NCBI RefSeq assembly: GCF_006345805.1
Contig: NC_043000.1
Location: 151,094,001 to 151,158,000 of the forward strand
DNA from: Octopus sinensis
Lineage: Eukaryota
Direction of reading: 5' to 3'
Length of the DNA: 64,000 nt
The notes beneath the pieces were generated by a model, which was not told where the DNA came from, searched no databases, and was given only the letters and a program-made list of their open reading frames with translations. Below are positions 12,436 to 53,998 of this stretch, in pieces; the first letter of the stretch is position 1; each line of letters starts with the position of its first letter. A program made the translations under genes and the position numbers.

Positions 12436-12467
<32 letters not shown>

Positions 12468-12471
12468 CTAA

Positions 12472-12544
<73 letters not shown>

Positions 12545-12939
12545 TCTACCATAGGTATCAAGTCTTGAAATTTGTGGTGAGGGGGATAGTCGATTACATC
12601 GATCCCAATACTCAACTAGTACGTAATTTATCGACCCCCGAAAGGGTGAAAGGCAAAGTCGACCTCGGCGGAATTTGAACACAGAACGCAGCGGCAGACG
12701 AAATACCTATTGATTTACTACCCACAAGAGGCTAAACACAGAGAGGACAAACATTGACAGACAAAACGAATTAAGTCGATTATATCGACCCCAGTGCGTA
12801 ACTGGTACTTATTTAATCAACCTCGAAAGGATGAAAGGCAAAGTCGACTTCGGCGGAATTTGAACCCAGAATGTAGCGGCACGCGAAATACCGCTAAGCA
12901 TTTCGTCCAGCGTGCTAACGATTCTGCCAACTCGCCGCC

Positions 12940-12940
<1 letters not shown>
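12545..12940 (-). mobile_element. S1-B SINE with an S1-A unit inserted in its head
   Basis: Junction gaaatacc|tattg at 12707/12708. The tail-A unit lies upstream (SINE sense) of the tail-B body. Confidence 0.78.
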
Positions 12941-13018
<78 letters not shown>

Positions 13019-19689: not shown

Positions 19690-20145
19690 GATCGGAAGAA
19701 TAGCAGGCCGTACAAACTGCTTAGCGGCATTTTGTCCGTCATTATGTTCAGAGTTCAAATACCTATTTCTTTATTACCCACAAGGGGCTAAACATAGAGG
19801 GGACAAACATGGACAGACATAGGTATTAAGTCGATTACATCGACCCCAGTGCGTAACTGGTACTTAATTTATCGACCCCGAAAGGATGAAAGGCAAAGTC
19901 GACCTCGGCGGAATTTGAACTCACAACGTAACGCAGACGAAATACCGCTAAGTATTTCGCCCGGCATGCTAACGTTTCTGCCAGCTCGCCTCAGAGTTCA
20001 AATACCGCCAAGGCTGACTTTGCCTTTCATCCTTTCAGGGTCGATAAAAAAAGTGCTGACTGAGCGCTAGATTCGATTTGTTCCCCACCCTCGATGTATC
20101 CCCTTTCTTCTCGAATTTCAGGTCCTGTGCCTAAAGCAGAAAGGA
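19690..20145 (+). mobile_element. Old S1-B SINE interrupted by an inverted full-length S1-A copy (19764-19990)
   Basis: 16-bp TSD tcagagttcaaatacc at 19748-19763 and 19991-20006. Confidence 0.85.
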
Positions 20146-20962: not shown

Positions 20963-21640
20963 ACTTCTGCTACAAAACAGAGGAACCATGGTGTAACCCA
21001 CTATGGTGTGGTAAACTTTCAGACCCTAGTCTAGATTGCGAATCCTATGTACCCCAGGATGGTTCAGCTCTCCACCCGTTAAAAGCCACCGTTTACAGAA
21101 TGAGGATAACAACGTAGCTTTCGCGCCCGTGCAACCGCCAGCCCATCGCGTGTGGTGGGTGGATCTTCAAGTTGCCACATGCATTCTATGTAGCTTAGAG
21201 TTGGTTTGAATTAGAGATTATTCTTTGTGGCTAATGGCGTGAGTCCTGATTGGAAGAAGAAGAAGAAGAAGAAGAAGAAGAAGAAGAAGAAGAAGAAGAA
21301 GAAGAAGAAGAAGAAGAAGAAGCCGCAGCAGCAACGGTAGCAGCAGTATTAACTACAGGTATAAGAAGAGTGCTATGAGAGTTGGTATCTTTGCAAAAAA
21401 CACAAGAATAGTTAGGAAAGTCTCTCTAAAAGTAACACTAGCAGTCTGAGAAAACTTGGAGGAAAGAGTTTAGAGAAGAATGTCGTACTGTAACAGTCAA
21501 GGGCCGACGAATGAAAAGGCTTACATTCACACAGATAGTGAAATGTTAAGAATATGGAACGGTGTAGATGTCATTACTCTGGCCAGTCGATATGAAGCAG
21601 TGGTAATGAGATTCCTCTCAGAAGCTCGCACATATATATA

Positions 21641-21862
21641 TTTCTTTATTGCCCACAATGGGCTAAACATAGAGGGGACAAACAAGGACAGACAAAGGGA
21701 TTAAGTCGATTATATCGACCCAGTGCGAAACTGGTACTTTATTTTTCGACCCCGAGAGGATGAAAGGCAAAGTCGACCCCGGCGGAATTTGAACTCAGAA
21801 CGTAACGACAGACGAAATACCGCTAAGCATTTCGTCCGGCGCGCTAACGTGTCTGCCAGCTC
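21641..21862 (-). mobile_element. Full-length S1-A SINE
   Basis: Complete head to tail A; agctcgcacatata repeated at both ends (TSD overlapping head microhomology). Confidence 0.85.
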
Positions 21863-22126
21863 GCACATATAGACCCTTCACTGTCCCTGGAGATATGTAA
21901 GCCAGTGAATTGAAAAGGTGAAAGTGTTGGATGTAATGTCTGAATTGAACAACTAGTGATTGGTCGTATGTTTTTTATTGCAGGGAGAGGACAGAATCCT
22001 GGACGTGTAGACTACCCACAGGAAGATTGGTCCAGAATCGACATGAAAATCTTGGTTCTAATAAGACAGAAAAAATTTGGACAACATAGATAGATAGATG
22101 GATAGATATAGATAGGTAGATAGATG

Positions 22127-25438: not shown

Positions 25439-25687
25439 CTCTATATGTCAGGTGGCGAGCTGGCAGAAACGTTAGCACGCCGAACGAAAAGTTTAGCAGT
25501 ATTTCGTCAGTCTTTACGTTCTGAGTTCAAATTCCGCCAAGGTCGACTTTGCTTTTCATCCTTTCGGGGTCGATAAATTAAGTACAGTTGCGCACAGGGG
25601 ACGATCTAATCGACTGGCCCATCCCCCCAAATTTTGAGCGGTGTGCCTACGTGTGTGTGTTTGTGTATGTGTGTTGTGATTAGGCAT

Positions 25688-26096
25688 TACTCTTTTTACT
25701 CTTTTACTTGTTTCAGTCATTTGACAGCGGCCATGCTGGAGCACCGCCTTTAATCGAGCAACTCGACCCCGGGACTTATTCTTTTGTAAGCCCAGTACTT
25801 ATTCTATCTGTCTCTTTTGCCGAACCGCTAAGTGACGGGGACGTAAACACACCAGCATCCGTTGTCAAGCGATGCTGGGGGGACAATCACAGACACACAA
25901 GCACACATACATATATATATATATACATATATACGAGAGGCTTCTTTCAGTTTCCGTCTACCAAATCCACTCACAAGGCATTGGTCGGCCCGGGGCTATA
26001 GCAGAAGACACCTGCCCAAGATGCCACGCAGTGGGACTGAACCCGGAACCATGTGGTTGGTTAGCAAGCTACTTACCACACAGCCACTCCTGCGCC
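25688..26096 (-). mobile_element. S2 SINE
   Basis: Near-identical to 8345-8747. Confidence 0.85.
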
Positions 26097-26197: not shown

Positions 26198-26530
26198 AAG
26201 GCAGCGAGCTGGCAGAATCGTTAGCATATCGGATATAATGCTTAGCTGCATTACGTTCGTCTTTACGTTCTGAGTTCAAATTCCGCCGAGGCCGACTCTG
26301 CTTTTCATCCTTTCAGGGTCGATTAGATAAGTACCAGTTACACACTGGGGTCGATATAATCGACTTAATCCGTTTGTCTGTCCTTGTTTGTCCTCTATGT
26401 GTTTAGCCCCTTGTGGGTAGTAAAGAAATAGGTGGTTACTTTCTGTGTTCAAATTCCGCCGAGGCCGACTATCGACTATCCCCCTCCTCCGAAATTGCTG
26501 GCCTTGTGCCTCAAATTTGAAACTGATATT
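26198..26530 (+). mobile_element. S1 SINE composite (tail A followed by tail-B body)
   Basis: ...gtgggtagtaaagaaata|ggtggtt...ttcaaattccgccgagg...ttgtgcctcaaatttgaaac. Confidence 0.7.
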
Positions 26531-26846
26531 CCTTGTAGGTGTCTGCATTTGCCCTTGTTGTAGCGCCCTGTCATTTTGAAATCTGTGTCGCTTATTCTTT
26601 CTATTGTTTGGGTGGATGATCCATTATGAATGTGATCGTTCCTATTATGTTAATTGCTTTGTGCAGTGAGATCTCAGGTGTTCATGTATGAGCGGTTTTA
26701 TTCTATTTTCGGTCTCTATTATGTTGCTTGTGATGGAAATATTTTCATTATATATATATATATATAAATGTGCGTGTATGTATGCGTATATATATATATA
26801 TATATATATATACGCATACATACACGCACATTTATATATATATATA

Positions 26847-27009
26847 GTCGCAGGAGTGGCTGTGTGGTAAGTAGCTTGTTTACCAGCCACATGGTTCCGG
26901 GTTCAGTCCCACTGCGTGGCACCTTGGGCAAGTGTCTTCTACTATAGCCTCGGGCCAATCAAAGCCTTGTGAGTGGATTTGGTAGACGGGAACTGAAAAG
27001 AAGCTCGTC

Positions 27010-27077
<68 letters not shown>

Positions 27078-27300
27078 TGTGTGTGTTTGTGTGTCTGTGT
27101 TTGTTCCCCTAGCATTGCTTGACAACCGATGCTGGTGTGTTTATGTCCCCGTTACTTAGCGATTCGGCAAAAAAGACCGATAGAATAAGTACTTGGCTTA
27201 CAAAAAGAATAACTCCCGGGGTCGAGTTGCTCGATTAAAGGCAGTGCTCCGGTATGGCCGCAGTCAAATGACTGAAAAAAGTAAAAAGAGTAAAAAGAGT
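26847..27300 (+). mobile_element. S2 SINE
   Basis: Full head to (aagagta)n tail with expanded internal TA tract. Confidence 0.85.
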
Positions 27301-28019
27301 ATATGCATACACACACATATATACATATATATTTGGAATTTACAAAAGAATCGAACAAAAGACGAAGACGGGTGTGTAAACAGCAAACAGGTTTATTAGT
27401 TTAACGCTCCGGACTTAGGAAAATTTATATAATTTTAAAAATTAGATATAGGGGACACAAGAATTCATTTATTCACCCCTATATAAAAAATTACAGACAT
27501 TTTAGTATGTTGTAAGCATAAATATTTAGCGTCTTATTATTTTCTTAAACTTTAAAATATAATTTTTTAGAATATAAAAGCTTTTTTGAAAATACGGTCC
27601 AATTAGATGATTAGATCCAATGAACACTTATGCACAAACCTGTAATCTTAAATTATTTTTTCATAGTAGAGAGTGGAATATTCCCATTGGCTATTATTTG
27701 CATGATGAACTAAAGTTAACCTTTCAATGAATTTCATTTCTTATTTAAACGTGGTAATCATCGATACTCAAAAACTGAACTTTCACCAACTGAATACTTA
27801 TTCGAGTGCCTGTCTGGTTTGTCATTTGCTGCTACTTTGTTAATACCGATTCGTTGAATTAATTACTGTTGCTTTGATATATTGTGTCTTTTGTATAAGA
27901 CTGTCAGTGGCCTTCGCGCGAAGGCTGCGTATTTAGTTCCCCCCTTGCGGGGGAATTATTGTGGGACATCTTGTGTGGAACACATTTAAAAATCTACACA
28001 AAAGGCTTGCAAAGCCAAA

Positions 28020-29320
28020 ATGTCTTTTGAAGGCTGTGAAAGCCAATTGAAAAGGCTTGAGATGGAACCTCCTATCTCATATTCACCGATCTCAGGTGAA
28101 GAAAGTTCACCAACCTCAGGTGAAGAAAGTTCACCGGCGGTGACGCCGGAAAAAGAACCGGCGGTGACGCCAGAAAAAGAAAAGGCCCCAGCGAAGAAGT
28201 TCGCGGAAGTCGCAGGTCGAAAACAAAAAAGGATCAACACAGATAGGAGCAACCTGGAAAAATACGAAGTCCTTTTGAAAAAGGAAGGAAACGAAATAGC
28301 AGTGGAAGCAGACGTCGGAAAGAAAGAAGAAATAGAAAAGAAAAGGATCATCTACAAGACCTACAATATAACAACGAAAAGCATCCAAAAAGTGGAGGAA
28401 AAGAAAATAGAGGATTGTCTGAAGGCAATAAGAAAAGACATAACATACATAAACCGAGGCAGAAGGTTTGGAACAGTTGAGGTGAGGTTTAAGACCGTGG
28501 AGATAGCAAAGAAGCTATCAACCGAACCTCAAAAAGTAGGGAATATAGTCCTTCTACCCCTGTACAGAGGCAGAAGGACCTCAAAAATAGTAATGAAAAA
28601 TATTCCGCCAGAAGCGGACGCCACATGCCTGGTGGCGGCAGTGATGCTAGGCCTGAAGGACAAAATCACTATCCTCCAGGCTACAGTAGAGGAGGAAGGG
28701 TTTTGGCAAGGCCAATGCATCACAATGGCGATCCAAGCCGAAGTCCAAACACTAGAAGAAATACCGGAGGTATTGAGGCTCAGCGAGGAGGAGAGGGTGC
28801 TAGTGTTCGTGGAGGGAAGAAAGCCGAGGTGCTTCGGCTGCGGTAAAAAGGGCACGTAAGAGCAGAGTGCCAACCTAAACTGCAGGTAGAAGCACCGCCG
28901 GAAAAGCAAAAAACAGAAAAGAAAACAGAGGAAAAAACACATGAAACCAAAGAGGTAGTAGAAACAACAAGTGGCGTAGAAAAGGAAAAAGAGGAGGGGT
29001 GGTCAAAAGTTACCAAAAAAAAACGGAAAACAGAAACCACCCCTCAGGAAGAGAACCAGAAGAAGAGAAAGGAAGCAACTAATTCATTTATGGCCATTAA
29101 GGCCACCAATAACAGACTAGTTAATGTTTTGGCAGGTATGGCCAAAGTGGAAAGAGTGAGAAAAACAAAAGACTGCATTGTGTATAAAATAGGCCGGAAG
29201 GATTACAGACGGATAAAATCCGAATTCTTCCACGACGTGGGCCCTCTGAGATTGGACATGTCTCCATATCTATACGAGGGCCTGCGTCGGACTCTCCCAC
29301 GAGCCAAGGAAAAAAATTAA
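28020..29320 (+). CDS. LINE ORF1 (gag-like: acidic N-terminus, RRM-like core, CCHC zinc knuckle), interrupted by one frameshift near 28850
   Basis: A -1 shift joins track ORFs 28020-28859 and 29090-29320 through an open frame and restores CFGCGKKGHVRAEC (CX2CX4HX4C); ~433 aa. Confidence 0.8.
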
Positions 29321-29377
29321 AGTGAAGACGACGAAAAACAAGACGAACAAATCGAACCACTGATATAAGGGTAAGTA

Positions 29378-32300
29378 ATGGATTACATTTATGTTGGTTG
29401 TTTGAATGTGCGCGGCCTGGGAGCAGGCTGGAAGCAAGGTCGCTTCCTGCATGATATCAGGTCGCGTAATTTAGATGTTATTGTTGCTACAGAAACCCGG
29501 TTAGAGGGGCCAAGAGGTCTACTCCCGCTGTTTGTCGGCTACGAGAGTTTTTTCTCTCCTGGCAGTCCTACAGGCGGGAGTGGGGTGTTGGTCCTATTAA
29601 AAAGAAACCGGGTTTCTGGGAAAAAGTTAATTTTTGCAGATCCAGAAGGTAGGCTGGTCGTCATGGATTTGACGTTCAGTAACGGTAAAGTTATCAGACT
29701 GGTTGCAATTTACGCACCCAACCATACAGGGCAAAGTGATTATTTTCGTGAACTAGAAAAATTTCTTGGTACTTCGCATTCATTAGTGGTGCTAGGAGAC
29801 TTTAACACAATTTGCAAAGCGGATGTAGATTGTGTTGGCTCGTGTCCAGATAGAAAAGGTAACAGTGGCTTCATGGAACTGCTAAGCCGCTTTGAGCTAG
29901 CAGATCCGTATAGGCTGGAATTTCCGAACGCTCCATTGTGGACATGGTCAAACAGCGACGGATCTTCCAGGTCATATTTAGATAGAATACTAATTAGAAA
30001 AGTAGACAGTAAAATAGTTAAGTGTCCACAGTTTTACCCGATCAGCTACAGTGATCATAAAATGGTCACTTGTAAGCTTGACATAGATAAGGTTAAAAAT
30101 AGAGGATCCGGTTACTGGAAACTTAATACGTCCCTTTTGGCGATTAAAGAGTACAAAGACCGGATTAAGAATATAATTCAGAGGGCACTATCTGGTACCA
30201 TCATTAATAACAAATGGTGGTACGCCCTCAAACGAGCCATCAAGTTTGAGTCTATTAGATATAGCATAGGAGTAGTGGCTAGAGAGGCTAGAAGGGAAAA
30301 TACTCTAGTTAAGGAATTAGAGGAAGCCATGAAAACTGGCTCTGCGGCTCAGGTGGCGGCCAAGAGACTGGTGTTAAACCAGCACCTCGAGGCCAAACAC
30401 ATGGGCTGCATTGTCAGGGCTAGAATCCGCCATATGGGATGTGAAGGAATCAACACCGTGAGATGGGCCCGAGTGGTGGAAGCTCAGCATGGTAACGATG
30501 CCACGATTCGATCTTTGACGAACCAACAAGGTGAGTTGATAAACGAACCCGAGGAGATGTGTGAGGCCTTTCAGGAGCACTTCGCTCAGCTTTTCGGTGA
30601 GTGCGGTGGACTGGATAGGAGAAGGGCCTTTACGGACCTACTCGACGGGCTGCCGCGCTTATCGGGGCGAGATGCGGAGGGCTGTGAAGGGCCAATCACG
30701 CCTGAGGAGGTGGTTGAGGCAATGGCGGACTGCGGCGCGGGCAAGGCGCCGGGTTTGGATGGTCTACCCTATGAGTTATATAAGAGTATGCCAGACTTGT
30801 TCGGGCACCTACTGGCGGAGGTCTATGCGAACTGGCAGCAGAACGGGCTTATACCCAGATCTGTGCGCCGGGGAGTGGTGACTCTCGTCAGAAAGGACCC
30901 GAGCAAGGGGGAGTGTATTGATAATTTCAGGCCCATCACTCTGCTAAACACAGAGTTGAAGATTTTGGCCAAAGTGTTATCGAAAAGATTGGCGCGTGTC
31001 GCGGATGGTCTGATCGGAGAGGCACAGACATGTGCCGTTCCGGGCAGATCCATTCAGGATAATCTCCATCTAATGCGGTACACTATAGAGGGGTTTAATA
31101 GTGATTCTGGCAAGGGTGGGGCACTGGTCCATTTAGACCAATCTAAAGCTTTTGATAGGGTCGACCATCGTTACCTGGTATCTGCCCTGGCACAGTTCGG
31201 GCTGAGCCTTGGCTTCCTCAGGTGGATTATCCAAATTTATGATAACATCGACTCGGTAGTTCGGGTGAACGGCTTCTTGTCGAAGCCGTTCAAAATCAAA
31301 CGCTCGGTTCGTCAAGGGTGTCCGCTCTCCCCGCTTTTGTACGTGATGGCTCTTGAGCCATTACTGCGAAAACTGAGCGGCATCCCGAGACAGCCAGGTA
31401 ATGGAAAATCAGTGTCAGCGTACGCGGATGACATCACCATCATCGTAACCGAAATGGACCACCTATGTAAAGTAGGCAAGGCCATAGAGGCTTACGAGAC
31501 GGTGACAGGAGCAAAAGTTAATCGCGAAAAGTCAGTCGGCTTGCAACTCGGCACCTGGAGAGGCAAGTCGATGCCTCCTGACAGCGTCGTGGGACGTTGG
31601 ACGGAGGGTCCGATTAAACTGCTAGGGGTCTGGTTCGGTCCAGACCTCCAAATAGAGAAGAATTGGGGCGAGATAACGAGCAAGGTGGCTGCAGTAGCCA
31701 AGACCTGGTCTTGGCGGTGGCTATCCCTGAAAGGGAGGGCGGAGGTAGCCAATGTGTTTATCGCATCGGTTATCACCTACCGCCTTTCCGTCGTTCCTTG
31801 CCCTGATTCGTGGTTGATCAAGTTGGAAAGACAGCTCTTCTACTTCTTGTGGAAGGGCGGAAAACCACTTGTGAAACGCTCTACTTGCTGTCAACAACCG
31901 TTAAAGGGTGGGCTAGGGATGCCTTGGCTGATGATGCGCAGACATGCGCTGAGGTTAAGACATCTGTGGCTCTACCTGGATAGTGAACGGGTGTGGTCTT
32001 CGTTAGCAAAACTGATGTTTCCCAAGTTCACTAGTTTCGGTGGATGGGAAACCTGGCTGAATCGTAGATCGAAACTTGGTACTTGGTACACGGAGTGTCG
32101 CAAGGCTCTCCTGCTATTCCGTCGCTCGGGCAACGCATGCGGTGGGGGTTCCACCACATTCTTCTATAGAGGGTTGGTAGAGGCGGAATGTGAAGATACC
32201 TTGGGGGAAACCCTGGGTCTCGACGATAATCAGCTGGCCAGTCTGTTCCGACGTACGTTCAAGCCGAGGACACTGGACAACTTCCAGAAGTCTCTGGCAT

Positions 32301-32773
32301 GGCAATGCTACAGAGGAGCTCTACCTGTTCGGGATAAACTCGCAAGGCACGGTGGCCAAGACAGTCCGATATGTCCAAGATGCGGGCGGGATAGGGAAAC
32401 CGTCCCGCACGCTATTGTTCATTGTCCGGACGTGTCTGAGGTGTGGGTTTATGCCGAACAGCTGTTGTCAGGTACACGAAGAGTACAGCTGTCGACTGAG
32501 TCGATTACAAAAATTGACCCACCGGATTTCCTCGCGAATGAAGGTAAGTTTTATTTTCTCGTTGTAGTAGCAATCGCGAAAGAGGTGATATGGAAGACGA
32601 GAATGAAAGATCTACAGTCAGGCAAGTTCATCTCCGGCCCTGGTTTGATGAATTATTTCATGTTTCACCTGAAAAGGAAGATAGGGCTGGAGAGAATATG
32701 CCTGACTAGGAGAGTGTATGAAGAACGATGGAAAGATGTAGCACGAAAGTTGCGAGTGAAAGATACAACATAA
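29378..32773 (+). CDS. LINE ORF2: APE endonuclease + reverse transcriptase + C-terminal CCHC finger (1131 aa)
   Basis: GCLNVRGL, ATETR, VLGDFN, YLDRILI, YSDH (APE); GSGYWKLNTSLL linker; APGLDGL, RPITLLN, DQSKAFDRVDH, RQGCPLSP, YADD (RT); CPRC...ETVPHAIVHC. No stops. Confidence 0.95.
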   Translation: MDYIYVGCLNVRGLGAGWKQGRFLHDIRSRNLDVIVATETRLEGPRGLLPLFVGYESFFSPGSPTGGSGVLVLLKRNRVSGKKLIFADPEGRLVVMDLTFSNGKVIRLVAIYAPNHTGQSDYFRELEKFLGTSHSLVVLGDFNTICKADVDCVGSCPDRKGNSGFMELLSRFELADPYRLEFPNAPLWTWSNSDGSSRSYLDRILIRKVDSKIVKCPQFYPISYSDHKMVTCKLDIDKVKNRGSGYWKLNTSLLAIKEYKDRIKNIIQRALSGTIINNKWWYALKRAIKFESIRYSIGVVAREARRENTLVKELEEAMKTGSAAQVAAKRLVLNQHLEAKHMGCIVRARIRHMGCEGINTVRWARVVEAQHGNDATIRSLTNQQGELINEPEEMCEAFQEHFAQLFGECGGLDRRRAFTDLLDGLPRLSGRDAEGCEGPITPEEVVEAMADCGAGKAPGLDGLPYELYKSMPDLFGHLLAEVYANWQQNGLIPRSVRRGVVTLVRKDPSKGECIDNFRPITLLNTELKILAKVLSKRLARVADGLIGEAQTCAVPGRSIQDNLHLMRYTIEGFNSDSGKGGALVHLDQSKAFDRVDHRYLVSALAQFGLSLGFLRWIIQIYDNIDSVVRVNGFLSKPFKIKRSVRQGCPLSPLLYVMALEPLLRKLSGIPRQPGNGKSVSAYADDITIIVTEMDHLCKVGKAIEAYETVTGAKVNREKSVGLQLGTWRGKSMPPDSVVGRWTEGPIKLLGVWFGPDLQIEKNWGEITSKVAAVAKTWSWRWLSLKGRAEVANVFIASVITYRLSVVPCPDSWLIKLERQLFYFLWKGGKPLVKRSTCCQQPLKGGLGMPWLMMRRHALRLRHLWLYLDSERVWSSLAKLMFPKFTSFGGWETWLNRRSKLGTWYTECRKALLLFRRSGNACGGGSTTFFYRGLVEAECEDTLGETLGLDDNQLASLFRRTFKPRTLDNFQKSLAWQCYRGALPVRDKLARHGGQDSPICPRCGRDRETVPHAIVHCPDVSEVWVYAEQLLSGTRRVQLSTESITKIDPPDFLANEGKFYFLVVVAIAKEVIWKTRMKDLQSGKFISGPGLMNYFMFHLKRKIGLERICLTRRVYEERWKDVARKLRVKDTT

Positions 32774-33420
32774 ATGTAATACCAAGCGCAACCAAAAGTA
32801 TCAGTGGGGAGGCGGGGCTCGTGGGGTCCGAGCTAAACCCGCACCCACTCCACCTGTAATGTCTTCCGGTCTGTTACATCATTCGATTTTGTGTCTATCT
32901 TGTAATTTCATGTTAATTTTTAAATTCGCTTTATTGTAAAAACCCATTCGTGTGTCTGACCCCACATCAGATTGTATTGTCCCCTCTATGTTCGCCCCTT
33001 GTGGGTAGTAATAAAATCGTTCACCAACTGGTCGTTGTTTTTGAGTGAGTTTTTGAATTGTGAGTTTTTGAATTGTTTGCCGTTGTTGTTGGACATTTGC
33101 CGTTGATTGTCTTATTGGATTTTTATCATTGTTGTTGGTTGTTTTCCATAGTTGTTGGAGGGAGCTGCACGCGGGGGTGGGCCAAGTTGTGGCCGGCCCG
33201 ATGGCGGCCCTAATTAGGGAGAGGGCGGAGGGACCAGCGGAAGACCGAGCAAGCAAGGGCCCACAAGGAGCGGCTGGCCCGCAGGGGGAGGAGGAGCCAG
33301 AAATGATGAGCGTGCCAATTTTTTCGGATTCCGACGAGGAGGGGGGGGCTGCATGTTCGAGGGAGCATTGATGTACCGGACCTGACAGGAGAGCAATAGA
33401 CACCAGGTACCGATGGTTCA

Positions 33421-33536
33421 CCCTATCGAAATTAAGTACCAGTTACGCACTGGGGTCGATGTAATCGACTTAATCCGTTTGTCTGTCCTTGTTTGTCCCC
33501 TCTATGTTTAGCCCCCTGTGGGCAGTAGAGAAATAT
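33421..33536 (+). mobile_element. 5'-truncated S1-A SINE
   Basis: aattaagtaccagttacgcactggggtcgat...ttgtcccctctatgtttagccccctgtgggcagtagagaaata. Confidence 0.85.
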
Positions 33537-33726: not shown

Positions 33727-36296
33727 TCAGGTCATCCCATAAGTTCTGTCCGAATTTTGGATAAAGAATCATAGTAATCAAATGTTATATTTAATTGAAA
33801 GTTAATCATCAATGTACTTTCCCTGATTATCCATGACTTACTTCCATCTATTTACAAGCTTTTTAATCCCATCAATGTAAAACTCTTTTGGTTTCAAAGC
33901 GAAGAACTCTGAAATGTCAGGTTCGACCTCCTCCTGGCTTGCGAAATGTGTGTACCCCTAATAATTCCGTGAACTATGAAACAAATGGTATCCTGAAGGA
34001 GTAAGGTCGGGAGAATAAGTTGGATGAAGAAATTTTTCCAAACCGACCTCTTCGATCTTCTGTGATGTGATCTTTGCAGTGTGGGGTTGCGCATTGTCCT
34101 GATGAAACATCACTCGTTTTCGACTCACTAAAGCGGCTCTTTTTTCCTTCAAAGCTTGGTTCAAACGCTCTAATTGCTGACAGTAGACCTGAGCATTAAT
34201 TGTTGCATTAGGTGGTAACAATATAAAGTAAATTACGCCTTTGCAATCGCACCAGATTGAGTAGAACCTTTTTCCCATGAAGTTCCCTTCTTGGTTGTGA
34301 TTGAGCATTTTCCCTTTTACCAAGCCACTGTTTACGACGTTTAACATTTCGATAGAAAATCCATTTTTCGTCACAAGTCTATCGAAAGGGTGAAATGAGT
34401 TTGCGAGAATGGAGAGAAGAGCAGATCTTAACTCGGGATTTGCGGTTGCTTTTGGACAATACATGAGGCACCTATTTTCCAAGTTTAGGAATCTTTCCAC
34501 GTTGTTGAAGATGACGATGAACTGTTGTATGGTTTGAAGTAAGCTTTATTGCCAGTTCTTCAACTGATAATGACGGATTTTCTTCAAGTAATGCCTCAAG
34601 GAGCTTATCATCAAACTCAACTGGACATCCTATTCGATCTTCATCTTCAATTTTGCAAACGATCTCCTGCAAGTTCTTTCATTTAAGCACTTTCCCATAA
34701 ACTGAGTGTATGTTTCGAGTCACTTCGGCTGCAGAGTTACCTTTATTGTACTCATAAAGAATTATATGCGCCTTAAATGCTCCTTGGATTCTTCCATGTT
34801 GAATGGGTTTTAATCAAAGCAATTTTTGGGTGTCCACGAAGTCTGGGTACATGGAATAAAATCATAACATAAACAAATATAAGAAATAATTTCCTTTTTT
34901 ACTTTTGTTTAAATTAAATAAAAAAAATACTTTACTTTTCTAAATTTATTTGTTATTTTTTCTACAGATAATCGAATGATGGCTCTGTCTAAAAAAGAAA
35001 GAATCCCAGATCGAATGATGGATCTGTCTAAAGAAGAAAGAATCGAGTTAGTATTATTAAGTGGACGAAAGGGATGGTCTTATCGCAAAATTGCGGAAGA
35101 ATTTAATCTTCGACACCCTTATAGGTAACCTATTTTTTTTACTGCCGTCGGGAAATTGATCAAGAAATTTAAAGAAACAGGCAGAGTTTTGGATAAACCC
35201 CTTTCCGGGTGACCAAAGACTTCAGATGAAACGAAAGAAGCTGTCATAGCTAAAGTTTCTGCTAGCCCAAAGAAATCACTTCGTCAGACATCCACGGTGT
35301 TAGGTGTTCCAAAACCAACCATCCACAAAATGCTGGTTGAGGAAAAGTTTCATCGATACAACCTAAAAATATTGCATCACTTAAATGAAGACGACCCTGA
35401 TAGACGAATGTAGACGTGTGAATGGTTTTCAAATAAATTGGATGAAAATATCAATTTTACGAAAAACTTTGTTGTTCAGTGACAAAGCTACGTTTTATGT
35501 AAATGGTGAGGTCAACAGACAGAATCTTCTATACTGGTCTTCAGGTAATCCACATTGGATGGATCCATCCAAACAGCAAGGCCGCAAAAAGGTGATGGTG
35601 TCGTGTGGTTTGTGGAAAGCTCATGTTCTAGGACCCTTCTTCATTGAACATGTAACGGATGAGACTTATGTAAACATATTGAGAGACAAATTAATATCTC
35701 AAATTGACGCCTAGGCGAGGGCCTTCTGAATTGGTTTCAGCAGGATGGGGCCCATACCCATTTTGCCACAACTGTTAGAGATTGGCTTAATGACACTTTT
35801 CCTCACTGGATTGGAAGAAGGGCTAATATGGAAAGGTCCCCTCGTTCACCAGACCTTTCTCCCCATGATTTCTTTTTCTGGGGTATGTTGAAAGAGAATG
35901 ATTACAATAAAGATTACAGATTACACATGAGAGAACGCATTACCAGTCAGTGTGTTGAAATTGATGGCAATGTATATTTATTTAATCAAGTTCACCTGAA
36001 TTTTGCAAGGCGCATCAAGTTATGCATTGAAAAATGATGGAAATCACTTTGAAAATATTATTTATTAACATTATAATTAAATAAAATTGTTTTGTTTTAA
36101 AAGTATGTGTTAATCCCCATGTACGCAGACTTTGTGGACACCCTCTATTATTTTGTAAAACAATATTGAATTAGTTTAAACGTACACAAATGCATAAAAA
36201 TAATTTTTAATTGAATGAGACATTTGCAAATACTATTAAATTTCATTCAAATCTAAAAAACAGGTAAAATTGGACAGAACTGACTGGATGACTTAA
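33727..36296 (-). mobile_element. Degenerate DD34D-type mariner, split by a nested element
   Basis: TIRs tcaggtcatcccataagttctgtcc (33727) and ggacagaactgactggatgacttaa|TA (36296). Transposase relics on minus ~34770-33850: LYEYNKGNSAAE, IEDEDRIGCPVEFD, FHQDNA, YSPDLTPSGYHLF. Confidence 0.85.
34828..36146 (+). mobile_element. Degenerate IS630-Tc1-mariner element, rosa-like (DD40-41D spacing), nested in the mariner 5' region
   Basis: TIRs gggtgtccacgaagtctgggtacatgg / ccatgtacgcagactttgtggacaccctc|TA. Relic ORF from ~35016 with stops: LFSDKATFYVNGEVNRQN, WFQQDGAHTH...(40 aa)...SPDLSPHDFFFWG. Confidence 0.85.
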
Positions 36297-40262: not shown

Positions 40263-41919
40263 ATTAAGATAAAACTTACTTGGAAAAGGATGCGTGGCGG
40301 TCGATCATATAATAATATAAATAATACATAAATATATGCACGTATACATATATATATGTATATGTATATATACATGCATATATGGGTAGAGGACATCAAA
40401 AAATGTTAAACAGAATGAGAAACGAAAACAAAAAAAAATGAAAACATAGAAAACGAACTTTGTTTTCGAACAACGAAAAAGACAAACAGAGAAACGAATC
40501 ATGCAACATAAAGAATATTCCTCTTCTTCAGTTGTCCCTGTTTCATCTACTCTGCAGTCCGAAGGTAAGGACAATACGGGACCTCGTTGAAACTGTCCTT
40601 CCCGCAAAGCAAATGAAATAAAATTTGGGATTTTTTGCGGACGGTGAAAGTGGTGACAAGAACAGGGCAGTGAGAAAAAGACAGTAAAAACAAACGGTTT
40701 TTTTATCGTCTTGGCTCAGCAGCACTCAACTAGTAGAGGTCTAACATTAATCGAAGTTTCTAAAGTTTGTTAGTTGGATAGAATTTCTGAATGAAGCAGA
40801 TGGCTTTTTTTTTTAGCTGTTTCTTTCTTTTTTTTGTTTGTTTCTTTTACCTTTTCTTTTTCAAACAGTTGCCACGTATTCTAATTCATTGTAATTTTTT
40901 TTTATAGCAAAACGTTTGTGTAGCAATTACTAATTCCAAAATTTAAATGTAGTTGATTTTATTCGTTAACTGTGTAGAATAGGTGTGAGGTCAAGCAAAA
41001 ACCTTTCTAGTTATAGTTTTATGTCGTGTCACAAAATTAACGAAACATCATCTCATATGGTATCATATAGCACAGTGCTTCAGTCGTAAAGTTACACCAA
41101 ATAAAGAAGAAAACAAATTTACACTTCAACAAATTATACATGGCTGGACTTATAATGCAGGGAACACATTACACAGCATACAATTGCTTACCAGATGGTT
41201 GCAGCATCGTTTGGCTGTAGTGGAGGACTACCAGATGGTTGTAACATAATTTTGATGTAGTGCAATGTCATAAAAATGTGTTAGCGAAATGTTAATAAAC
41301 CTCTACAGACAATATTTATTTAGTTGTTTTTGGTTTTGGATTTACATTTTTGTTTTGTTTTTGTTTTTGTTTTTGTTTTGTGAAGCATCTTCTTTTAAAG
41401 GGGTTGTTGGTAACAACAGATATCAAATATCATTCTAATACAGGAGATAACAGATAAATGTGTTGTGAAATAATTGACAGCAATTCATGTGTCAAGCGAT
41501 ACATTTGCCACATAATCAACGACATGAGAATAAACTCGATATGGTACATTTATGATGAATTTGGAAAATGAGAGAAAGAGAAAGAGAGAGCGAGAGGAGG
41601 GACGGAGGAAGAGAGAGTGGGAGAAAGTGGTGAAGAAGAAGAAGAAGAAGAGAGAAATGGAGGGAGGATATTAAAGAAATGAAAGAAATAAAAGGACTCT
41701 GAAGGTGTTATTGCTTTATGTATTCATAAAGCATTAATCGTGAAGGAGTGTAAATTAGAAAGTAAAATTAAAGAAACAGCATATCAAATGTGTTTTGAGT
41801 GATAAATATCTACGAGGTTTGGAATTCATATTTTACTTGATATATATTTTATTTGTAAAATAAATTGCTAAATGAGTGGTCGATACTTTTTACTTACAAA
41901 CACACATTCTTTTATCATA

Positions 41920-42139: not shown

Positions 42140-42174
<35 letters not shown>

Positions 42175-42647: not shown

Positions 42648-42674
42648 CACACACACACATGTATGTATATATAT

Positions 42675-42903
42675 TTCTTTACTACCCACAAGGGGCTAAA
42701 CATAGAGAGGACAAACAAGGACAGACAAACAGATTAAGTCGATTACATCGACCGCAGTGCGAAAGTGGTACTTTATTTATCGACCCCGAAAGGATGAAAG
42801 GCAAAGTCGACCTCGGCGGAATTTGAACTCAGAACGTAACGACAGATGAAATACCGCTATGCATTTCGTCCGGCGCGCTAACATTTCTGCCAGCTCGCCG
42901 CCT
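42675..42903 (-). mobile_element. Full-length S1-A SINE
   Basis: catgtatgtatatat repeated on both flanks. Confidence 0.85.
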
Positions 42904-43879
42904 TACATGTATGTATATATGTGTGTAGATGTGTGAGTATGTGTCGGTCTGTGTGTGTGTGTGTGCGCGCGCGACCGAAAAATGAATATGGGAGTCACGT
43001 AATACCTTACGTACGTTTCATGTGCAAAAATGAGCACACAGAATGCCTAAAATCACTAATGAAAATACCGAAATGGAAATTTTCCGAAATATTTGAACAT
43101 TTGAACATTTGAGACTAACAGCTCTAGAATACTGTAGAAAAATAATCATCATTTTATCTTATTTTATTGTAAATCTACTAACACTATCATTTTACTTTAT
43201 TCTTACTCTTCCTCAAACCGCACGAAGATAACATTTCTACTTTCCCCATTATTTTTCTTTTTTTTTTTACGTAATGTAGTCCTAATGTCTACACTGAAGA
43301 TTCACATTATACTGAAACGGCCTGTCGGCAGATTTAGAGGTGACTGAATATATTAGATATATCAGAAGAAATACATTGCCTTGATTTATTGTTTACTTTC
43401 CTGTAAGAACTTAACAGAAATCCTATTTTTTCATGTGCTACACTCTTGTATATAATTTGAATGAACTATGCGCGTGTATGTGTTCTTGTGTGTGGGGGTA
43501 CGCATGCGCGATTTCGCAGTTATGACTGTATGGTTAAAAAAGTTCGTTTTACCTACATGTGATTTGGGTTCCACTCCGTCATATCTTGAGTAAGGCTCTT
43601 CTACTAAAGCCTCGGACTGACTAATGCCTTTTAAGTATAATAAGTAAATGAAAACTATACAAAATCTACCTTGAGAGGCTCTAGTCGATCATATCCCTCT
43701 CAACACTTATTCTTAAGTGTAGCCTGTCTTACTGATATCTACTTGCTGATCCACTAATTGAAAGGAAACGAAAAAGTTAAAGGATACAAAAAAATACATC
43801 GTTAATCGGGCAGTGTTAACAGTAAGATATACATAGAAAGCCATACATATATACATGCACACACACCCACACATACACA

Positions 43880-47716: not shown

Positions 47717-48115
47717 TATTTCTTTATTGCCCACAAGGGGCTAAAAATAAGGGGACAAACAAGGACAGACAAAAGGATTAAGTCGATTTCCTCGACTCCA
47801 GTGCGTAACTGGTACTTAATTTATCGACCCCGAAAGGACGAAAGGCAAAATTGACCTCGGCAGAATTTGAACTCAGAACGTAACGGCAAACGAAATATCT
47901 ATTTCTTTATTACCCACAAGGGGACAAACAAGGACAGACATAGGTATTAAGTCGATTACATCGACCCCAGTGCGTAACTGGTACTTAATTTATCGACCCC
48001 GAAAGGATGAAAGGCAAAGTTGACCTCGGCGGAATTTGAACTCAGAACGTAACGGCAGCCGAAATACCGCTAGGCATTTCGGCCGGCGTGCTAACGTTTC
48101 TGCCAGCTCGCCGCC
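47717..48115 (-). mobile_element. S1-A SINE dimer
   Basis: Junction gaaatatc|tatttc at 47899/47900. Confidence 0.85.
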
Positions 48116-48606
48116 TTAAACGGACAAGACACCGATAAGCATTTTCCCCGGCATGCTAACGATTCTGCCGCCTTAATGATTAAAGAAAATGATAATAATC
48201 ATTATAATTATAATGAACACAGGTTTGGGTTATTACAAAAGGGTATGGTCGATTAAAATCGACCCCTAAAACATGGTATAACTACCTATAAGTTTTATTT
48301 CTTTGTCTTACAGATTACCGTGTATAAAGTGGGGTTTGTTTTTCTTTTAATTGATCATCTTAGTCATTTCCTTTTCCAATAATCCTATGAGAGGATCTAA
48401 TGCACCATCAGCTGCATTTTGGTCTTCCCGAAATGTGTGCAGTATTTTCGGTATGAAACAGCTATTTGCATTGTTGGAAGATTTGGTCTGTTGTTTCTGG
48501 TGTTATTTTGATATTTTGTCTCTTTTGTCTATATTACATGCAATGTTAATGGGATGTGTATGTGCGTGTCTATGTGTGGTATATGTTTATGGGTATACAT
48601 ATATAT

Positions 48607-51879: not shown

Positions 51880-52476
51880 TTTTCTTTACTACCCACAAGG
51901 GGCTAAACACAGAGAGGACAAACAAGGACAGACAAACGGATTAAGTTGATTATATCGACCCCTGTGCGTAACTGGTACTTATTTAATCGACCCTGAAAGG
52001 ATGAAAGTCGACCTCGGCAGAATTTGAACTCAGAACGTAACGTCAGACGAAATACCTATTTCTTTACTACCCACAAGGGGCTAAACATAGAGAGGACAAA
52101 CAAGGACAGACGAACGGATTAAGTCGATTATATCGACCCCAGTGCGTAACTGGTACTTATTTAATCGATCTCAAAAGGATGAAAGGCAAAGTCGACCTCG
52201 GCGGAATTTGAACTCAGAACGTAACGGCAGACGAAATACCTATTTCTATTTCTTTACTACCCACAAGGGGCTAAATATAGAGAGGACAAACAAGGACAGA
52301 CAAACGGATTAAGTCGATTATATCGACCCCAGTGCGTAACTGGTACTTATTTAATCGACTGAAAGGATGAAAGGCAAAGTCGACCTCGGCGGAATTTGAA
52401 CTCAGAACGTAACGGCAGACGAAATACTGTTAAGCATTTCGCCCGGCGTGCTAAAGTTTCTGCCAGCTCACCGCCT
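51880..52476 (-). mobile_element. S1-A SINE trimer
   Basis: Junctions gaaatacc|tatttc at 52056/52057 and 52240/52241. The whole array is flanked by the 22-bp direct repeat ttgactcacagagaatttacct (51858-51879 and 52477-52498). Confidence 0.88.
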
Positions 52477-52937
52477 TTGACTCACAGAGAATTTACCTGT
52501 TACTATGCAGTGACAACCACAGAAAAATCGTTAACATTATTTTCTTATTTTGACACCTTGCCAAAATATATGTCTGGTTAAAGAAATAAATTGATGTTGT
52601 ACATGTCTGTTATTTATTTTATCTCTGTCAGGGCACGCTGGGAATCGTACCAATATCACCATCAAATCACAACCTATCTCTTAAAATGAAGACACATTAG
52701 GCAGTATACTCCCAGATATACTGAGATGGATAGCCAGTTCGGGCCCCTAGATAGTGTACGTAAAAAAATTACAGTATCACAAATCACCGAATGTAGATGG
52801 CTGTTTTTATTGATAAATAAAACGTTATCTCACTCTTAATTCCACATATATATGCAACTTTACCTACCACTTAGAGAATTGATTGTTGCAATTCGATACA
52901 TATACTACATACATACATACATACATACATACATACC

Positions 52938-53739: not shown

Positions 53740-53972
53740 TTCTTTATTACACACAAGGGGCTAAACATAGAGGGGACAAACAAGGACAGACAAACGGATT
53801 AAGTCGATTACATCGACCCCACTGCGTAACTGGTACTTAATTTTATCGACCCCCCCTAAAGGATGAAAGGCAAAGTCGACCTCGGCGGAATTTGAACTCA
53901 GAACGTAACGGCAGACGAAATACGGCTACGCATTTCGCCCGGCGTGCTAACGGTTCTGCCAGCTCGCCGCCT
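53740..53972 (-). mobile_element. Full-length S1-A SINE
   Basis: taatagttagcata on both flanks. Confidence 0.85.
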
Positions 53973-53998
53973 TTAATAGTTAGCATAGTCAGCCGAAG

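What the first reader, a model, noticed from the sequence alone, without database searches (positions are those of the whole stretch)
32950..33019. The S1-A SINE tail is a copy of this Tx1-type LINE's 3' end
Seen: LINE 32977-33017 ttgtcccctctatgtt-cgccccttgtgggtagtaataaaat versus SINE ttgtcccctctatgtttagccccttgtgggtagtaaagaaat gives 38 of 42 columns identical by hand. Looser similarity extends upstream (cgtgtgtctgacc vs cgtttgtctgtcc), covering essentially the whole ~65-nt tail A. Established: shared 3' tails mark SINE/LINE partnerships with stringent RNA recognition, typical of CR1/L2/RTE, whereas mammalian L1 partners rely on poly(A). Inference: a tRNA-headed SINE mobilised by a stringent, non-poly(A) L1/Tx1-clade element, with both partners present in one window. 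I cannot tell from here whether this pair is already catalogued.
Basis: partly seen in the sequence, partly recalled or inferred. Interest (0 to 1): 0.82.

Follow-up and report, generated by a model that had tools for sequence, protein, structure and literature searches.

The report
Octopod SINE borrows L1-type LINE tail
The last ~70 bases of a near-intact L1-like retrotransposon in this octopus-type genome are also the tail of the window's most abundant short repeat (SINE), and related LINEs in other octopods end the same way. This LINE lineage is therefore very likely the engine that copies the SINE, a familiar arrangement that is rarely seen for L1-type elements.

Summary
Window 32945-33017 is the 3' end of a 5.2-kb LINE (27793-33019, flanked by an 11-bp target-site duplication, TSD). 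It matches the 62-nt tail of the 232-nt S1-A SINE, which has 17 copies in the window. Over the whole tail, 55 of 61 aligned bases are identical, with one 10-nt indel.

Every related LINE I could fetch whose contig reaches its 3' end terminates in the same tail. These come from Octopus sinensis, Argonauta hians, three Logan assembly contigs and one metagenome contig, with ORF2 50-63% identical. Against the O. sinensis copy the tail is better conserved (84%) than the neighbouring UTR (64%) or the ORF2 DNA (74%).

The LINE homology starts where the S1 tail variants A, B and C diverge from the common body. LINE and SINE tails also co-vary by species. All tails share a 4-bp hairpin with an invariant CUUGU loop and compensatory stem changes. 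No element ends in poly(A).

Three points remain open:
- Tx1-clade placement was not tested; only L1-superfamily membership was shown.
- A tRNA origin of the head was not detectable.
- Trans-mobilisation is an inference.

This is a new member of a known kind. I found no published description, but I could not check Repbase or Dfam.

The parts
27793..33019 (+). Full-length L1-superfamily LINE (5227 bp): 5'UTR, ORF1, ORF2, 3'UTR; single copy in the window
   Evidence: Bounded by the 11-bp TSD. blastn finds no other copy of its body in the window.
27782..27792 (.). 5' target-site duplication TTCACCAACTG
   Evidence: This is the only shared word of 11 nt or more between 27401-28019 and 33006-33130. 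It reached that length in 71/2000 shuffles for that wide search, and it lies 2 nt from the end of the tail homology.
33020..33030 (.). 3' target-site duplication TTCACCAACTG
28020..28859 (+). ORF1, first part (279 aa), broken by a frameshift at the A-run 28845-28849 inside a CCHC knuckle (CFGCGKKG | HVRAEC). The reading frame continues from 28850 to about 29317.
   Evidence: The CX2CX4HX4C motif is only seen when the two frames are read across the A-run.
29378..32773 (+). ORF2, intact, 1131 aa: AP-endonuclease, reverse transcriptase and C-terminal zf-RVT
   Evidence: Pfam Exo_endo_phos 5e-13, RVT_1 2e-31, zf-RVT 2e-8. Human L1 ORF2p 8sxt E=2e-65 over residues 3-868.
32774..33019 (+). LINE 3'UTR (246 nt), with no poly(A) or microsatellite at the end
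32816..32834 (+). Conserved hairpin-like block in the proximal 3'UTR (GGCTCG-TGGGGTC-CGAGCT). It is LINE-specific and absent from the SINE.
   Evidence: Conserved in L004 and L006 in the pairwise alignments. The structure was read by eye and not tested.
32945..33017 (+). LINE 3' tail shared with S1-A SINEs and with LINE relatives in other octopods
   Evidence: 84% identity to the O. sinensis LINE tail, against 64% for the proximal UTR. Alignment A1. 55/61 aligned bases identical to the S1-A tail.
32955..32971 (+). LINE-only inverted repeat TCTGA-CCCCACA-TCAGA. Its 3' half lies in the 10-nt segment missing from the SINE.
   Evidence: Present in the window, L004, L006 and L009 LINEs, and absent in L005, L011 and the SINE.
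32994..33006 (+). Terminal hairpin: stem GCCC/GGGU around the loop CUUGU
   Evidence: 81.8% of cells paired across 33 distinct tails, against 64.2% in shuffles (0/500) and 21-45% when slid. 3 of 4 pairs show double-sided changes.
42673..42904 (-). Full-length S1-A SINE (232 nt) with a 16-bp TSD ATATATACATACATGT. It ends ...GTAGTAAAGAAAT directly at the TSD.
53740..53973 (-). Full-length S1-A SINE with TSD TATGCTAACTATTA
51881..52477 (-). S1-A array: one full unit (consensus positions 1-232) followed by two units that start at consensus position 50
5382..5992 (-). S1-A array: one full unit plus two units starting at position 50. A further tail-C unit lies at 5254-5374.
47718..48117 (-). S1-A array: one full unit plus one unit starting at position 52
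33429..33534 (+). 5'-truncated S1-A copy (consensus 127-232), 410 bp downstream of the LINE. It is an independent insertion.
26198..26429 (+). Full-length S1-A copy
19765..19990 (-). S1-A copy
21640..21864 (-). S1-A copy
12714..12941 (-). S1-A copy, followed by a tail-B unit at 12588-12707
2878..3072 (-). S1-A copy (consensus 39-232)
3370..3533 (+). S1-A copy (consensus 69-232)

Best explanation
The window comes from an octopod genome. It carries a young, nearly intact L1-superfamily LINE at 27793-33019, probably of the class labelled 'L1-Tx1' in octopus annotations.

The last ~73 nt of this LINE form a conserved cis-acting 3' tail of an octopod-wide LINE lineage. The tail ends in a 4-bp hairpin with a CUUGU loop, followed by an A-rich ...UAGUAAUAAAAU terminus without poly(A).

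The S1-A SINE (232 nt) consists of a Pol III-type head, a common body, and a 62-nt tail copied from this LINE lineage.

Shown:
- The homology between LINE and SINE tails.
- The shared terminus.
- Conservation of the tail.
- Covariation in the hairpin.
- Co-variation of LINE and SINE tails by species.

Inferred:
- The LINE's ORF2 protein recognises this tail on its own RNA to start target-primed reverse transcription ('stringent' recognition).
- S1-A RNA is copied in trans because it presents the same tail.
- The S1 tail variants B and C are served by sister LINE subfamilies, because they carry the same CUUGU hairpin with compensatory stems.
For: 1. The match is real and far above chance.
2. 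The LINE ends where the SINE ends. The 11-bp TSD starts 2 nt after the homology. SINE copies end ...AAAGAAAT directly at their TSDs.
3. Seven related LINE copies or lineages (ORF2 50-63% aa identity) carry the tail at their very 3' end, after which the flanks are unrelated: O. sinensis L004, Argonauta L005 plus a truncated copy at L005 ~4760-4850, and L006/7, L009/10, L011, L013. L004 is a 5'-truncated copy whose empty site can be read through a satellite unit.
4. Tail identity between the window and L004 is 84%, against 64% for the proximal UTR and 74% for the last 600 nt of ORF2.
5. The LINE homology begins within about 3 nt of the point where S1 tails A, B and C diverge from the common body.
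6. Species-specific co-variation: the window LINE and SINE share GCCCCTTGTGGGTAGTAA, while the Argonauta LINE and at least two Argonauta SINE families share G(G)CCCTTGTGGCTAATA.
7. The hairpin with loop CUUGU is 81.8% paired, against 64% in shuffles (0/500) and 21-45% when slid. Stem pair 2 is CG in 12 tails and GC in 12. Only 10/280 background CTTGT sites show 4/4 pairs.
8. ORF2 is intact and L1-like. S1-A copies are 88-97% identical to their consensus, which is compatible with fairly recent activity.
9. The established framework is that SINEs recruit partner LINEs through a shared 3' tail (PMC3747384) and that stringent LINE ORF2 proteins bind a 3' stem-loop (PMC4176376).
Against: - There is no functional test.
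- Whole-tail folding energies are no better than shuffles (z from -0.9 to +0.1). The hairpin is only 4 bp and is poorly kept in the more distant LINEs L006, L009 and L011. I picked the structure after seeing the sequences, and many tails are related by descent, so the shuffle control overstates the support.
- The window LINE is 90% identical to the SINE tail, not 100%, and carries a 10-nt segment the SINE lacks. It also ends AATAAAAT rather than AAAGAAAT. This copy's subfamily is therefore a close relative of the true donor or driver, not necessarily the driver itself.
- ORF1 of this copy has a frameshift.
- Only one LINE copy from the window's own genome could be examined. No closer relatives (above 65% aa identity) were in the searchable collections.
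Confidence: 0.78

Rival explanations
1. The segment in the LINE is a 5'-truncated S1-A SINE that inserted into, or was fused onto, the 3'UTR of this one LINE copy.
For: Only one LINE copy exists in the window. 5'-truncated S1-A copies do exist, for example 33429-33534.
Against: - The same tail ends seven other LINE copies or lineages in at least two other octopod genera.
- Four of the LINE tails share a 10-nt segment absent from all SINE copies.
- One TSD flanks LINE plus tail as a unit.
- Tail divergence among LINEs tracks LINE divergence.
Confidence: 0.02
2. The direction is reversed. An ancestral LINE of this lineage captured its 3' end from a SINE, and the sharing is historical. Today's S1-A copies are, or were, mobilised by some other LINE such as RTE, CR1 or Dong-R4, which are abundant in octopus.
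For: Homology alone does not give direction. RTE, CR1 and Dong-R4 are the most abundant recently active LINEs in O. vulgaris (PMC13282606). No functional data exist.
Against: - The SINE body carries interchangeable tails (A, B, C), whereas the LINE lineage keeps one tail across 50-63% aa divergence.
- The start of the homology coincides with the SINE module boundary.
- LINE and SINE tails co-vary within species, which a purely historical relic would not do.
- The tail is under stronger constraint than the adjacent UTR in the LINE.
- No other LINE is present in the window to compare.
Confidence: 0.12
3. The tail is shared, but recognition is relaxed, as in mammalian L1. The tail is conserved for another reason, such as transcript termination or stability, and the SINE is mobilised through its A-rich end.
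For: L1-clade elements are the classic relaxed type. [quoted passage not shown] The terminus is A-rich. The whole-tail fold is not unusually stable.
Against: - No poly(A) is present on any LINE or SINE copy.
- Several unrelated SINE heads in Argonauta all carry the same tail.
- Hairpin covariation.
- Stringent L1-clade lineages are documented in plants and algae (PMC3472496).
Confidence: 0.08

Closest known systems
Stringent SINE/LINE pairs with a common 3' tail (tortoise Pol III SINE/CR1, eel UnaSINE1/UnaL2, MIR/L2, zebrafish ZfL2; Ohshima and Okada; PMC3747384, PMC4176376)
   Same: - The SINE tail of about 60 nt is homologous to the LINE 3' end.
- Both elements share the terminus.
- A small 3' stem-loop has a conserved loop and variable, compensating stems.
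- There is no dependence on poly(A).
- The SINE is modular, with exchangeable tails.
   Different: The partner here is an L1-superfamily element (AP-endonuclease, RT and zf-RVT; best PDB match human L1 ORF2p), not CR1, L2 or RTE. No retrotransposition or binding assay exists for it.
L1-clade stringent pairs in green plants: maize ZmSINE2/ZmSINE3 with LINE1-1_ZM, and Chlamydomonas SINEX-3_CR with L1-1_CR (PMC3472496)
   Same: - An L1-clade LINE lineage has a 3' end (~45-80 nt) conserved well above the rest of the element.
- The end forms a hairpin with compensatory changes.
- The end is shared with SINEs.
   Different: Those are plant and algal lineages, and L1-1_CR and its SINE end in poly(A). 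The present pair is in an animal (octopods), has no poly(A), and has a different sequence and loop (CUUGU).
SINEU / Tx1-Mar in crocodilians (PMC4494074)
   Same: A SINE group is proposed to be mobilised by Tx1-clade LINEs in an animal.
   Different: SINEU ends in poly(A), and the link rests on shared target preference and shared snRNA-derived 5' ends, not on a shared 3' tail. Here the link is a shared specific 3' tail, and no target specificity is evident.
Octopus SINEs OK, OR1 and OR2 (Ohshima and Okada 1994) and the 'tRNA-Core' / 'tRNA-Deu' SINE classes of octopus genome papers (PMC8967140, PMC13282606)
   Same: They share host group, size range, Pol III-type head, conserved central domain and very high copy number. 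S1 is plausibly one of these families.
   Different: I could not compare sequences, because those consensus sequences are not held here. In the papers I could read, octopus SINE classes carry no LINE-partner suffix and no partner is named.

Membership tests
SINE/LINE pair with common 3' tail (stringent type) | The SINE 3' region is homologous to the 3' end of a LINE in the same genome | tested here: met
   55/61 aligned bases identical, blastn E down to 3e-8.
SINE/LINE pair with common 3' tail (stringent type) | The homology lies at the very terminus of both elements | tested here: met
   The LINE TSD starts 2 nt after the homology. SINE copies end at their TSDs. Relatives diverge immediately after the tail.
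SINE/LINE pair with common 3' tail (stringent type) | The tail is a stable feature of the LINE family, not of one copy | tested here: met
   Present in 7 other LINE copies or lineages from at least 2 other octopod genera. Not tested on further copies from the window's own genome.
SINE/LINE pair with common 3' tail (stringent type) | A conserved 3' stem-loop supported by compensatory changes | tested here: met
   A 4-bp stem with CUUGU loop is 81.8% paired, against 64% in shuffles (0/500). 3 of 4 pairs have double-sided changes. Caveats: the stem is short, the sequences are related, the structure was chosen after inspection, and the whole-tail MFE is not exceptional.
SINE/LINE pair with common 3' tail (stringent type) | The tail is required for retrotransposition, and the SINE is mobilised in trans by the LINE protein | not testable with these tools
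   This needs a retrotransposition or RNA-binding assay.
L1 superfamily of non-LTR retrotransposons | ORF2 has an N-terminal AP-type endonuclease, an RT and a C-terminal Cys-rich domain, and its closest solved relative is L1 ORF2p | tested here: met
   Pfam Exo_endo_phos, RVT_1, zf-RVT. 8sxt L1 ORF2p E=2e-65, against R2 4e-26.
Tx1 clade (L1-Tx1) | The RT groups with Xenopus Tx1, Keno, Kibi and Koshi in a phylogeny | not tested
   No reference RT set was available. The only indirect support is that octopus annotations list L1-Tx1 as the L1-type class, with 13 recently active families in O. vulgaris (PMC13282606).
Tx1 clade (L1-Tx1) | ORF1 carries a CCHC zinc knuckle (not the mammalian coiled-coil/RRM/CTD type) | tested here: inconclusive
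   CFGCGKKG|HVRAEC reads as CX2CX4HX4C only across a frameshift at 28845-28849. Pfam gave no significant ORF1 domain.
Tx1 clade (L1-Tx1) | Target-sequence-specific insertion (common, but not universal, in the clade) | tested here: inconclusive
   Only two LINE insertions had readable targets, TTCACCAACTG and ATTGGAT, and they are unrelated. Several SINE copies sit in (ATT)n tracts. The sample is too small.
tRNA-derived SINE | The 5' head is detectably derived from a tRNA | tested here: not met
   ARAGORN found 0 genes. Rfam found no tRNA match at gathering score, nor at E up to 10 on the head alone. The only visible features are a B-box-like AGTTCAAATTCC (consensus 76-87) and GGCGG (3-7) complementary to CCGCC (86-90). 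A second, short Argonauta SINE with the same tail gives a sub-threshold tRNA match (21.8 bits, E 0.09).
SINE (general) | Short, non-coding, high-copy, dispersed, and flanked by TSDs | tested here: met
   The consensus is 232 nt. About 30 S1 copies lie in 64 kb, 17 of them with tail A. TSDs are 14-16 bp.

The most novel reading that the evidence does not exclude
An octopod-wide L1/Tx1-type LINE lineage uses a sequence-specific 3' signal: a CUUGU-loop hairpin plus an A-rich, non-poly(A) terminus. It is the previously unnamed driver of the hallmark octopus SINE expansion. All three S1 tail variants (A, B, C), and unrelated SINE heads in Argonauta, carry versions of the same hairpin. This would be the first animal example of a stringent L1-clade SINE/LINE partnership.
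Probability: 0.35. Interest if true: 0.65.

Novelty: new member of a known kind. Interest (0 to 1): 0.5.

Why it matters
SINEs make up roughly a tenth of octopus genomes, and their expansion is repeatedly cited as a lineage-specific feature of octopus genome evolution. Yet the papers I could read class them only as 'tRNA-Core' or 'tRNA-Deu' and name no autonomous partner. Pinning the most abundant SINE in this window to an L1-type LINE lineage has three consequences:

- It gives a testable engine for that expansion.
- It adds an animal case to the very short list of L1-clade elements that appear to recognise a specific 3' tail rather than poly(A). Only three such SINEs, all in plants or algae, were known in the 2012 survey.
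- It bears on whether stringent recognition is ancestral in the L1 clade.

It also offers a compact candidate recognition element (4-bp stem, CUUGU loop) for biochemical work.

Tried and rejected
- **Exact look-up of the window's ORF2.** It is not on record. The full-length ORF2 search returned only distant relatives of 37-58% identity, whose contigs were cut or lacked similarity. Re-searching with the C-terminal 297 aa was what found the octopod relatives.
- **Pattern scans of metagenome contigs for the tail.** Two scans gave 0 hits.
- **Contigs that end before the tail.** L001, L008 and L012 are uninformative.
- **Whole-tail RNA folding.** z-scores were near 0, so I dropped the idea of a large stable structure and kept only the small hairpin.
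- **LINE-only inverted repeat 32955-32971.** I rejected it as the shared recognition element, because the SINE and the Argonauta LINE lack it.
- **tRNA origin of the S1 head.** Not detectable by ARAGORN or Rfam.
- **LINE partners for tails B and C.** None is in the window. The only other coding remnant is a mariner transposase fragment.
- **Tx1 versus L1 placement.** No reference sequences were available, so it was left untested.
- **Literature.** Searches found no description of an octopus SINE/L1-Tx1 tail partnership. Albertin 2015 was not held.

Full report
**What is at the coordinates**

The core 17-mer CCCCTTGTGGGTAGTAA occurs 16 times in the window with up to 2 mismatches, against 0 expected. 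All other occurrences lie at the 3' ends of copies of one short repeat.

blastn of the whole LINE region (27401-33500) against the window shows that 32972-33018 is the only part of the LINE repeated elsewhere. It matches SINE tails at 83-89% identity with E down to 3e-8.

I built a 232-nt consensus of the SINE (S1-A) from 17 copies, which are 88-97% identical to it. Against that consensus:
- The 'looser' upstream block is real.
- One local alignment joins the two blocks: 55 identities over 61 aligned bases, one 10-nt LINE-only segment and two 1-nt gaps.
- It covers LINE 32945-33017 and SINE positions ~170-232.

**The LINE**

An 11-bp direct repeat, TTCACCAACTG, lies at 27782-27792 and 33020-33030. 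It is the only shared word of 11 nt or more between the two flanks. In a deliberately wide search space it reached that length in 71/2000 shuffles, but it starts just 2 nt after the end of the tail homology. The element is therefore 27793-33019 (5227 bp).

- **ORF2 (29378-32773, 1131 aa)** is intact. It has AP-endonuclease, RT and zf-RVT domains. Its best solved relative is human L1 ORF2p, at E=2e-65 over residues 3-868, far ahead of R2 proteins.
- **ORF1 (28020-28859)** stops inside what reads as a CCHC knuckle, CFGCGKKG|HVRAEC. The knuckle is seen only if the frame is shifted at the A-run 28845-28849. The other frame then runs on to about 29317.
- **The 3'UTR** is 246 nt and has no poly(A) or microsatellite.

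I showed L1-superfamily membership. I did not test Tx1-clade placement, because no reference RT set was available. Published octopus annotations list 'L1-Tx1' as the L1-type class, with 13 recently active families in O. vulgaris (PMC13282606).

**The SINE**

Full-length S1-A copies have 14-16-bp TSDs and end ...GTAGTAAAGAAAT directly at the TSD, without poly(A) (copies 42673-42904 and 53740-53973).

About 30 S1 copies lie in the 64 kb. Many share only consensus positions 1 to ~168 and then carry other tails:
- Tail B: ...GGCCTTGTGCCTATAGTAGAAAGGA
- Tail C: ...GGCCTTGTGCCAAAATTTGAAACCAATA

The body/tail junction (after ...ATCGACTT) therefore lies within about 3 nt of where the LINE homology begins. 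That is what one expects if a LINE 3' end was grafted onto a SINE body. A randomly truncated SINE sitting inside a LINE would not be expected to break there.

The claim of a tRNA-derived head is not confirmed:
- ARAGORN finds nothing.
- Rfam finds no tRNA match at gathering score, nor at E up to 10 on the head alone.
- Only a B-box-like AGTTCAAATTCC and an acceptor-like complementarity are visible.

The window's exact ORF2 is not in the protein collection, and the full-length search gave only distant or truncated relatives. A search with the C-terminal 297 aa found octopod relatives at 50-66% identity.

I fetched their contigs. Every LINE copy whose contig reaches far enough ends in the same tail:

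| Locus | Source | Position or ending |
|---|---|---|
| L004 | Octopus sinensis chromosome CM016876.1 | 10997-11069 |
| L005 | Argonauta hians | 11125-11190, plus a heavily truncated second copy at ~4760-4850 |
| L006/L007 | Logan contigs | tail at the 3' end |
| L009/L010 | Logan contigs | tail at the 3' end |
| L013 | Logan contig, internally deleted LINE derivative | ends ...GGGTAATAAAGAAT |
| L011 | ENA contig | tail at the 3' end |

Further points:
- After the tail, the flanks are unrelated between loci.
- L004 is a 5'-truncated copy flanked by ATTGGAT. Its empty site reads straight through a local satellite unit.
- Four of the LINE tails (window, L004, L006, L009) share the 10-nt segment that every SINE copy lacks. 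They are orthologous LINE sequence, not SINE insertions.
- L001, L008 and L012 end before the tail and are uninformative.

**Constraint and co-variation**

Identity to the window LINE:

| Region | O. sinensis L004 | L006 |
|---|---|---|
| Tail | 84% | 76% |
| Proximal 3'UTR | 64% | 66% |
| Last 600 nt of ORF2 | 74% | 75% |

In the Argonauta locus, at least two SINE families with different heads end in the same tail. One is S1-like. The other is a ~140-nt element with a sub-threshold tRNA match of 21.8 bits. Their version, GGCCCTTGTGGCTAATAGAGAAAT, matches the Argonauta LINE, GCCCTTGTGGCTAATAAAAGAAAT. The window's SINE and LINE instead share GCCCCTTGTGGGTAGTAA.

The window LINE matches S1-A perfectly across the hairpin region but differs at the extreme end (AATAAAAT vs AAAGAAAT). 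The O. sinensis LINE has the AAAGAAAT end. The actual donor or driver is therefore probably a close sister subfamily.

**A candidate recognition element**

Whole-tail folds are not unusually stable (z from -0.9 to +0.1). All tails nevertheless contain an invariant (C)UUGU flanked by four potentially pairing bases:

| Tail | Stem and loop |
|---|---|
| Window LINE and S1-A | GCCC-CUUGU-GGGU |
| Argonauta SINEs and O. sinensis LINE | GGCC-CUUGU-GGCU |
| Argonauta truncated LINE | GACC-CUUGU-GGUC |
| Tails B and C (inner 3 pairs) | GGC-CUUGU-GCC |

Results on 33 distinct tails (alignment A2; counts):
- 81.8% of cells pair, against 64.2% in shuffles (0/500) and 21-45% when the partner is slid.
- Three of four pairs show double-sided changes.
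- Stem pair 2 is CG in 12 tails and GC in 12.

Among 280 non-tail CTTGT sites in the same sequences, only 10 show 4/4 pairs.

Caveats:
- The stem is short.
- The sequences are related by descent.
- I chose the structure after seeing them.
- The more distant LINEs (L006, L009, L011) keep it only partly.

**Mechanism**

Shown:
- A shared, terminal, conserved and co-varying tail.
- Absence of poly(A).
- An intact L1-type ORF2.

Inferred from the established SINE/LINE common-tail model (PMC3747384) and from stem-loop recognition by stringent LINE ORF2 proteins (PMC4176376):
- ORF2p binds the tail to prime reverse transcription at the nicked target.
- S1-A RNA is copied in trans because it carries that tail.

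Tails B and C carry the same loop with compensating stems. I therefore suggest, with lower confidence, that sister LINE subfamilies serve them.

**Comparison with known systems, and novelty**

The phenomenon itself is classical. What is less ordinary is the clade.

[quoted passage not shown] All three were in plants or a green alga (PMC3747384, PMC3472496).
- The one proposed Tx1-driven SINE group in animals, SINEU/Tx1-Mar, ends in poly(A). It is linked to its LINE by target preference, not by a tail (PMC4494074).
- Bivalve SINE partners fall in four LINE clades, and the paper never mentions Tx1 (PMC11481361).
- Octopus genome papers class the dominant SINEs as tRNA-Core or tRNA-Deu and name no partner (PMC8967140, PMC13282606).

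I found no description of this pair, but I could not consult Repbase, Dfam or SINEBase sequences, and Albertin 2015 was not held. I therefore rate it a new member of a known kind, of moderate interest.

**Limits**

- The source species is not identified. The evidence is that ORF2 relatives are octopod and that an S1 body fragment 87% identical to the window's occurs in O. sinensis.
- Only one LINE copy from the window's own genome was available.
- No experiment bears on mobilisation.

Noticed in passing
window 51881-52477, 5254-5992, 47718-48117, 12588-12941, 2801-3072, 26198-26470: S1 SINEs repeatedly occur as head-to-tail composites. One full unit (consensus positions 1-232) is followed by 1-3 units that all start at consensus position ~50 (...AAAGAAAT[AGAAAT]AG|GTATTTCG...). 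The same junction appears at several independent loci, and units with different tails (A then B or C) can be mixed. This suggests either recurrent template switching of the reverse transcriptase at a fixed point in the head, or multimeric master copies. Simple local tandem duplication seems less likely.
   Followed up: partly
window 3553-3920, 10755-10912, 12298-12435, 25450-25640 (tail B); 2375-2570, 5205-5374, 20229-20400, 26432-26530 (tail C): S1 subfamilies with alternative tails B (...GGCCTTGTGCCTATAGTAGAAAGGA) and C (...GGCCTTGTGCCAAAATTTGAAACCAATA). Both keep the CUUGU loop, with stems that compensate relative to tail A. No LINE with these ends is in the window or in the fetched loci.
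   Followed up: partly
window 26845-27300; also ~8900-9300, 25700-26000, 41900-42320, 44150-44460, 47150-47200: A second, longer SINE-like family with a CORE-like block (CACCTTGGGCAAGTGTCTTCTACTATAGCCTCGGGCC). It shares with S1 a central block (GATA.AATAAGTAC...GGGGTCGA...TCGATTAA). Its tail is different and ends in a hairpin-like CAGTCAAATGACTG followed by AAAAGTAAAAAGAG. It presumably has a different LINE partner.
   Followed up: no
window 28845-28849: The ORF1 frameshift in the LINE falls in an A5 homopolymer inside the CCHC knuckle. It could be a genuine inactivating mutation or a homopolymer assembly error. ORF2 is fully open.
   Followed up: partly
window 32816-32834: A second conserved block in the LINE 3'UTR (GGCTCG TGGGGTC CGAGCT) could form a 6-bp hairpin. 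It is conserved in the O. sinensis and Logan relatives and is not present in the SINE.
   Followed up: no
window 10740-10930, 12280-12990; L005 4850-4900 and 11190-11205: Several S1 copies, and both Argonauta LINE 3' ends, abut (ATT)n/(TTA)n microsatellites. Some TSDs are ATT repeats. This could reflect a target preference of the LINE endonuclease for such tracts. The sample is too small to judge.
   Followed up: no
window 33958-34500 (-): A mariner-type transposase fragment (Pfam Transposase_1 5e-15, DDE_3) lies about 1 kb downstream of the LINE.
   Followed up: partly
window 33140-33370: An isolated GC-rich stretch (about 65% G+C in an otherwise ~36% G+C region) lies between the LINE's 3' TSD and the next SINE. 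It is not repeated in the window, and the overlapping 180-aa minus-strand ORF has no Pfam match.
   Followed up: partly
L003 ~4290-4320 (marine metagenome contig with a 37%-identical LINE): Just downstream of this distant LINE's 3'UTR, the minus strand reads ...AACCCCCTTGTGGGTGATTTCAATGG. This is a CCCC-CUUGU-GGGU motif like the octopod tail hairpin, in the opposite orientation. It may be an unrelated element's 3' end, and it hints that the motif is wider than octopods.
   Followed up: no
L013 (Logan SRR11869391, 1083 bp): An internally deleted LINE derivative. It keeps short ORF2 pieces (aa ~477-497 and 876-1067) and a shortened UTR but retains the tail, and it is seen in 5 samples. It may be a non-autonomous LINE deletion family that uses the same tail.
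   Followed up: no
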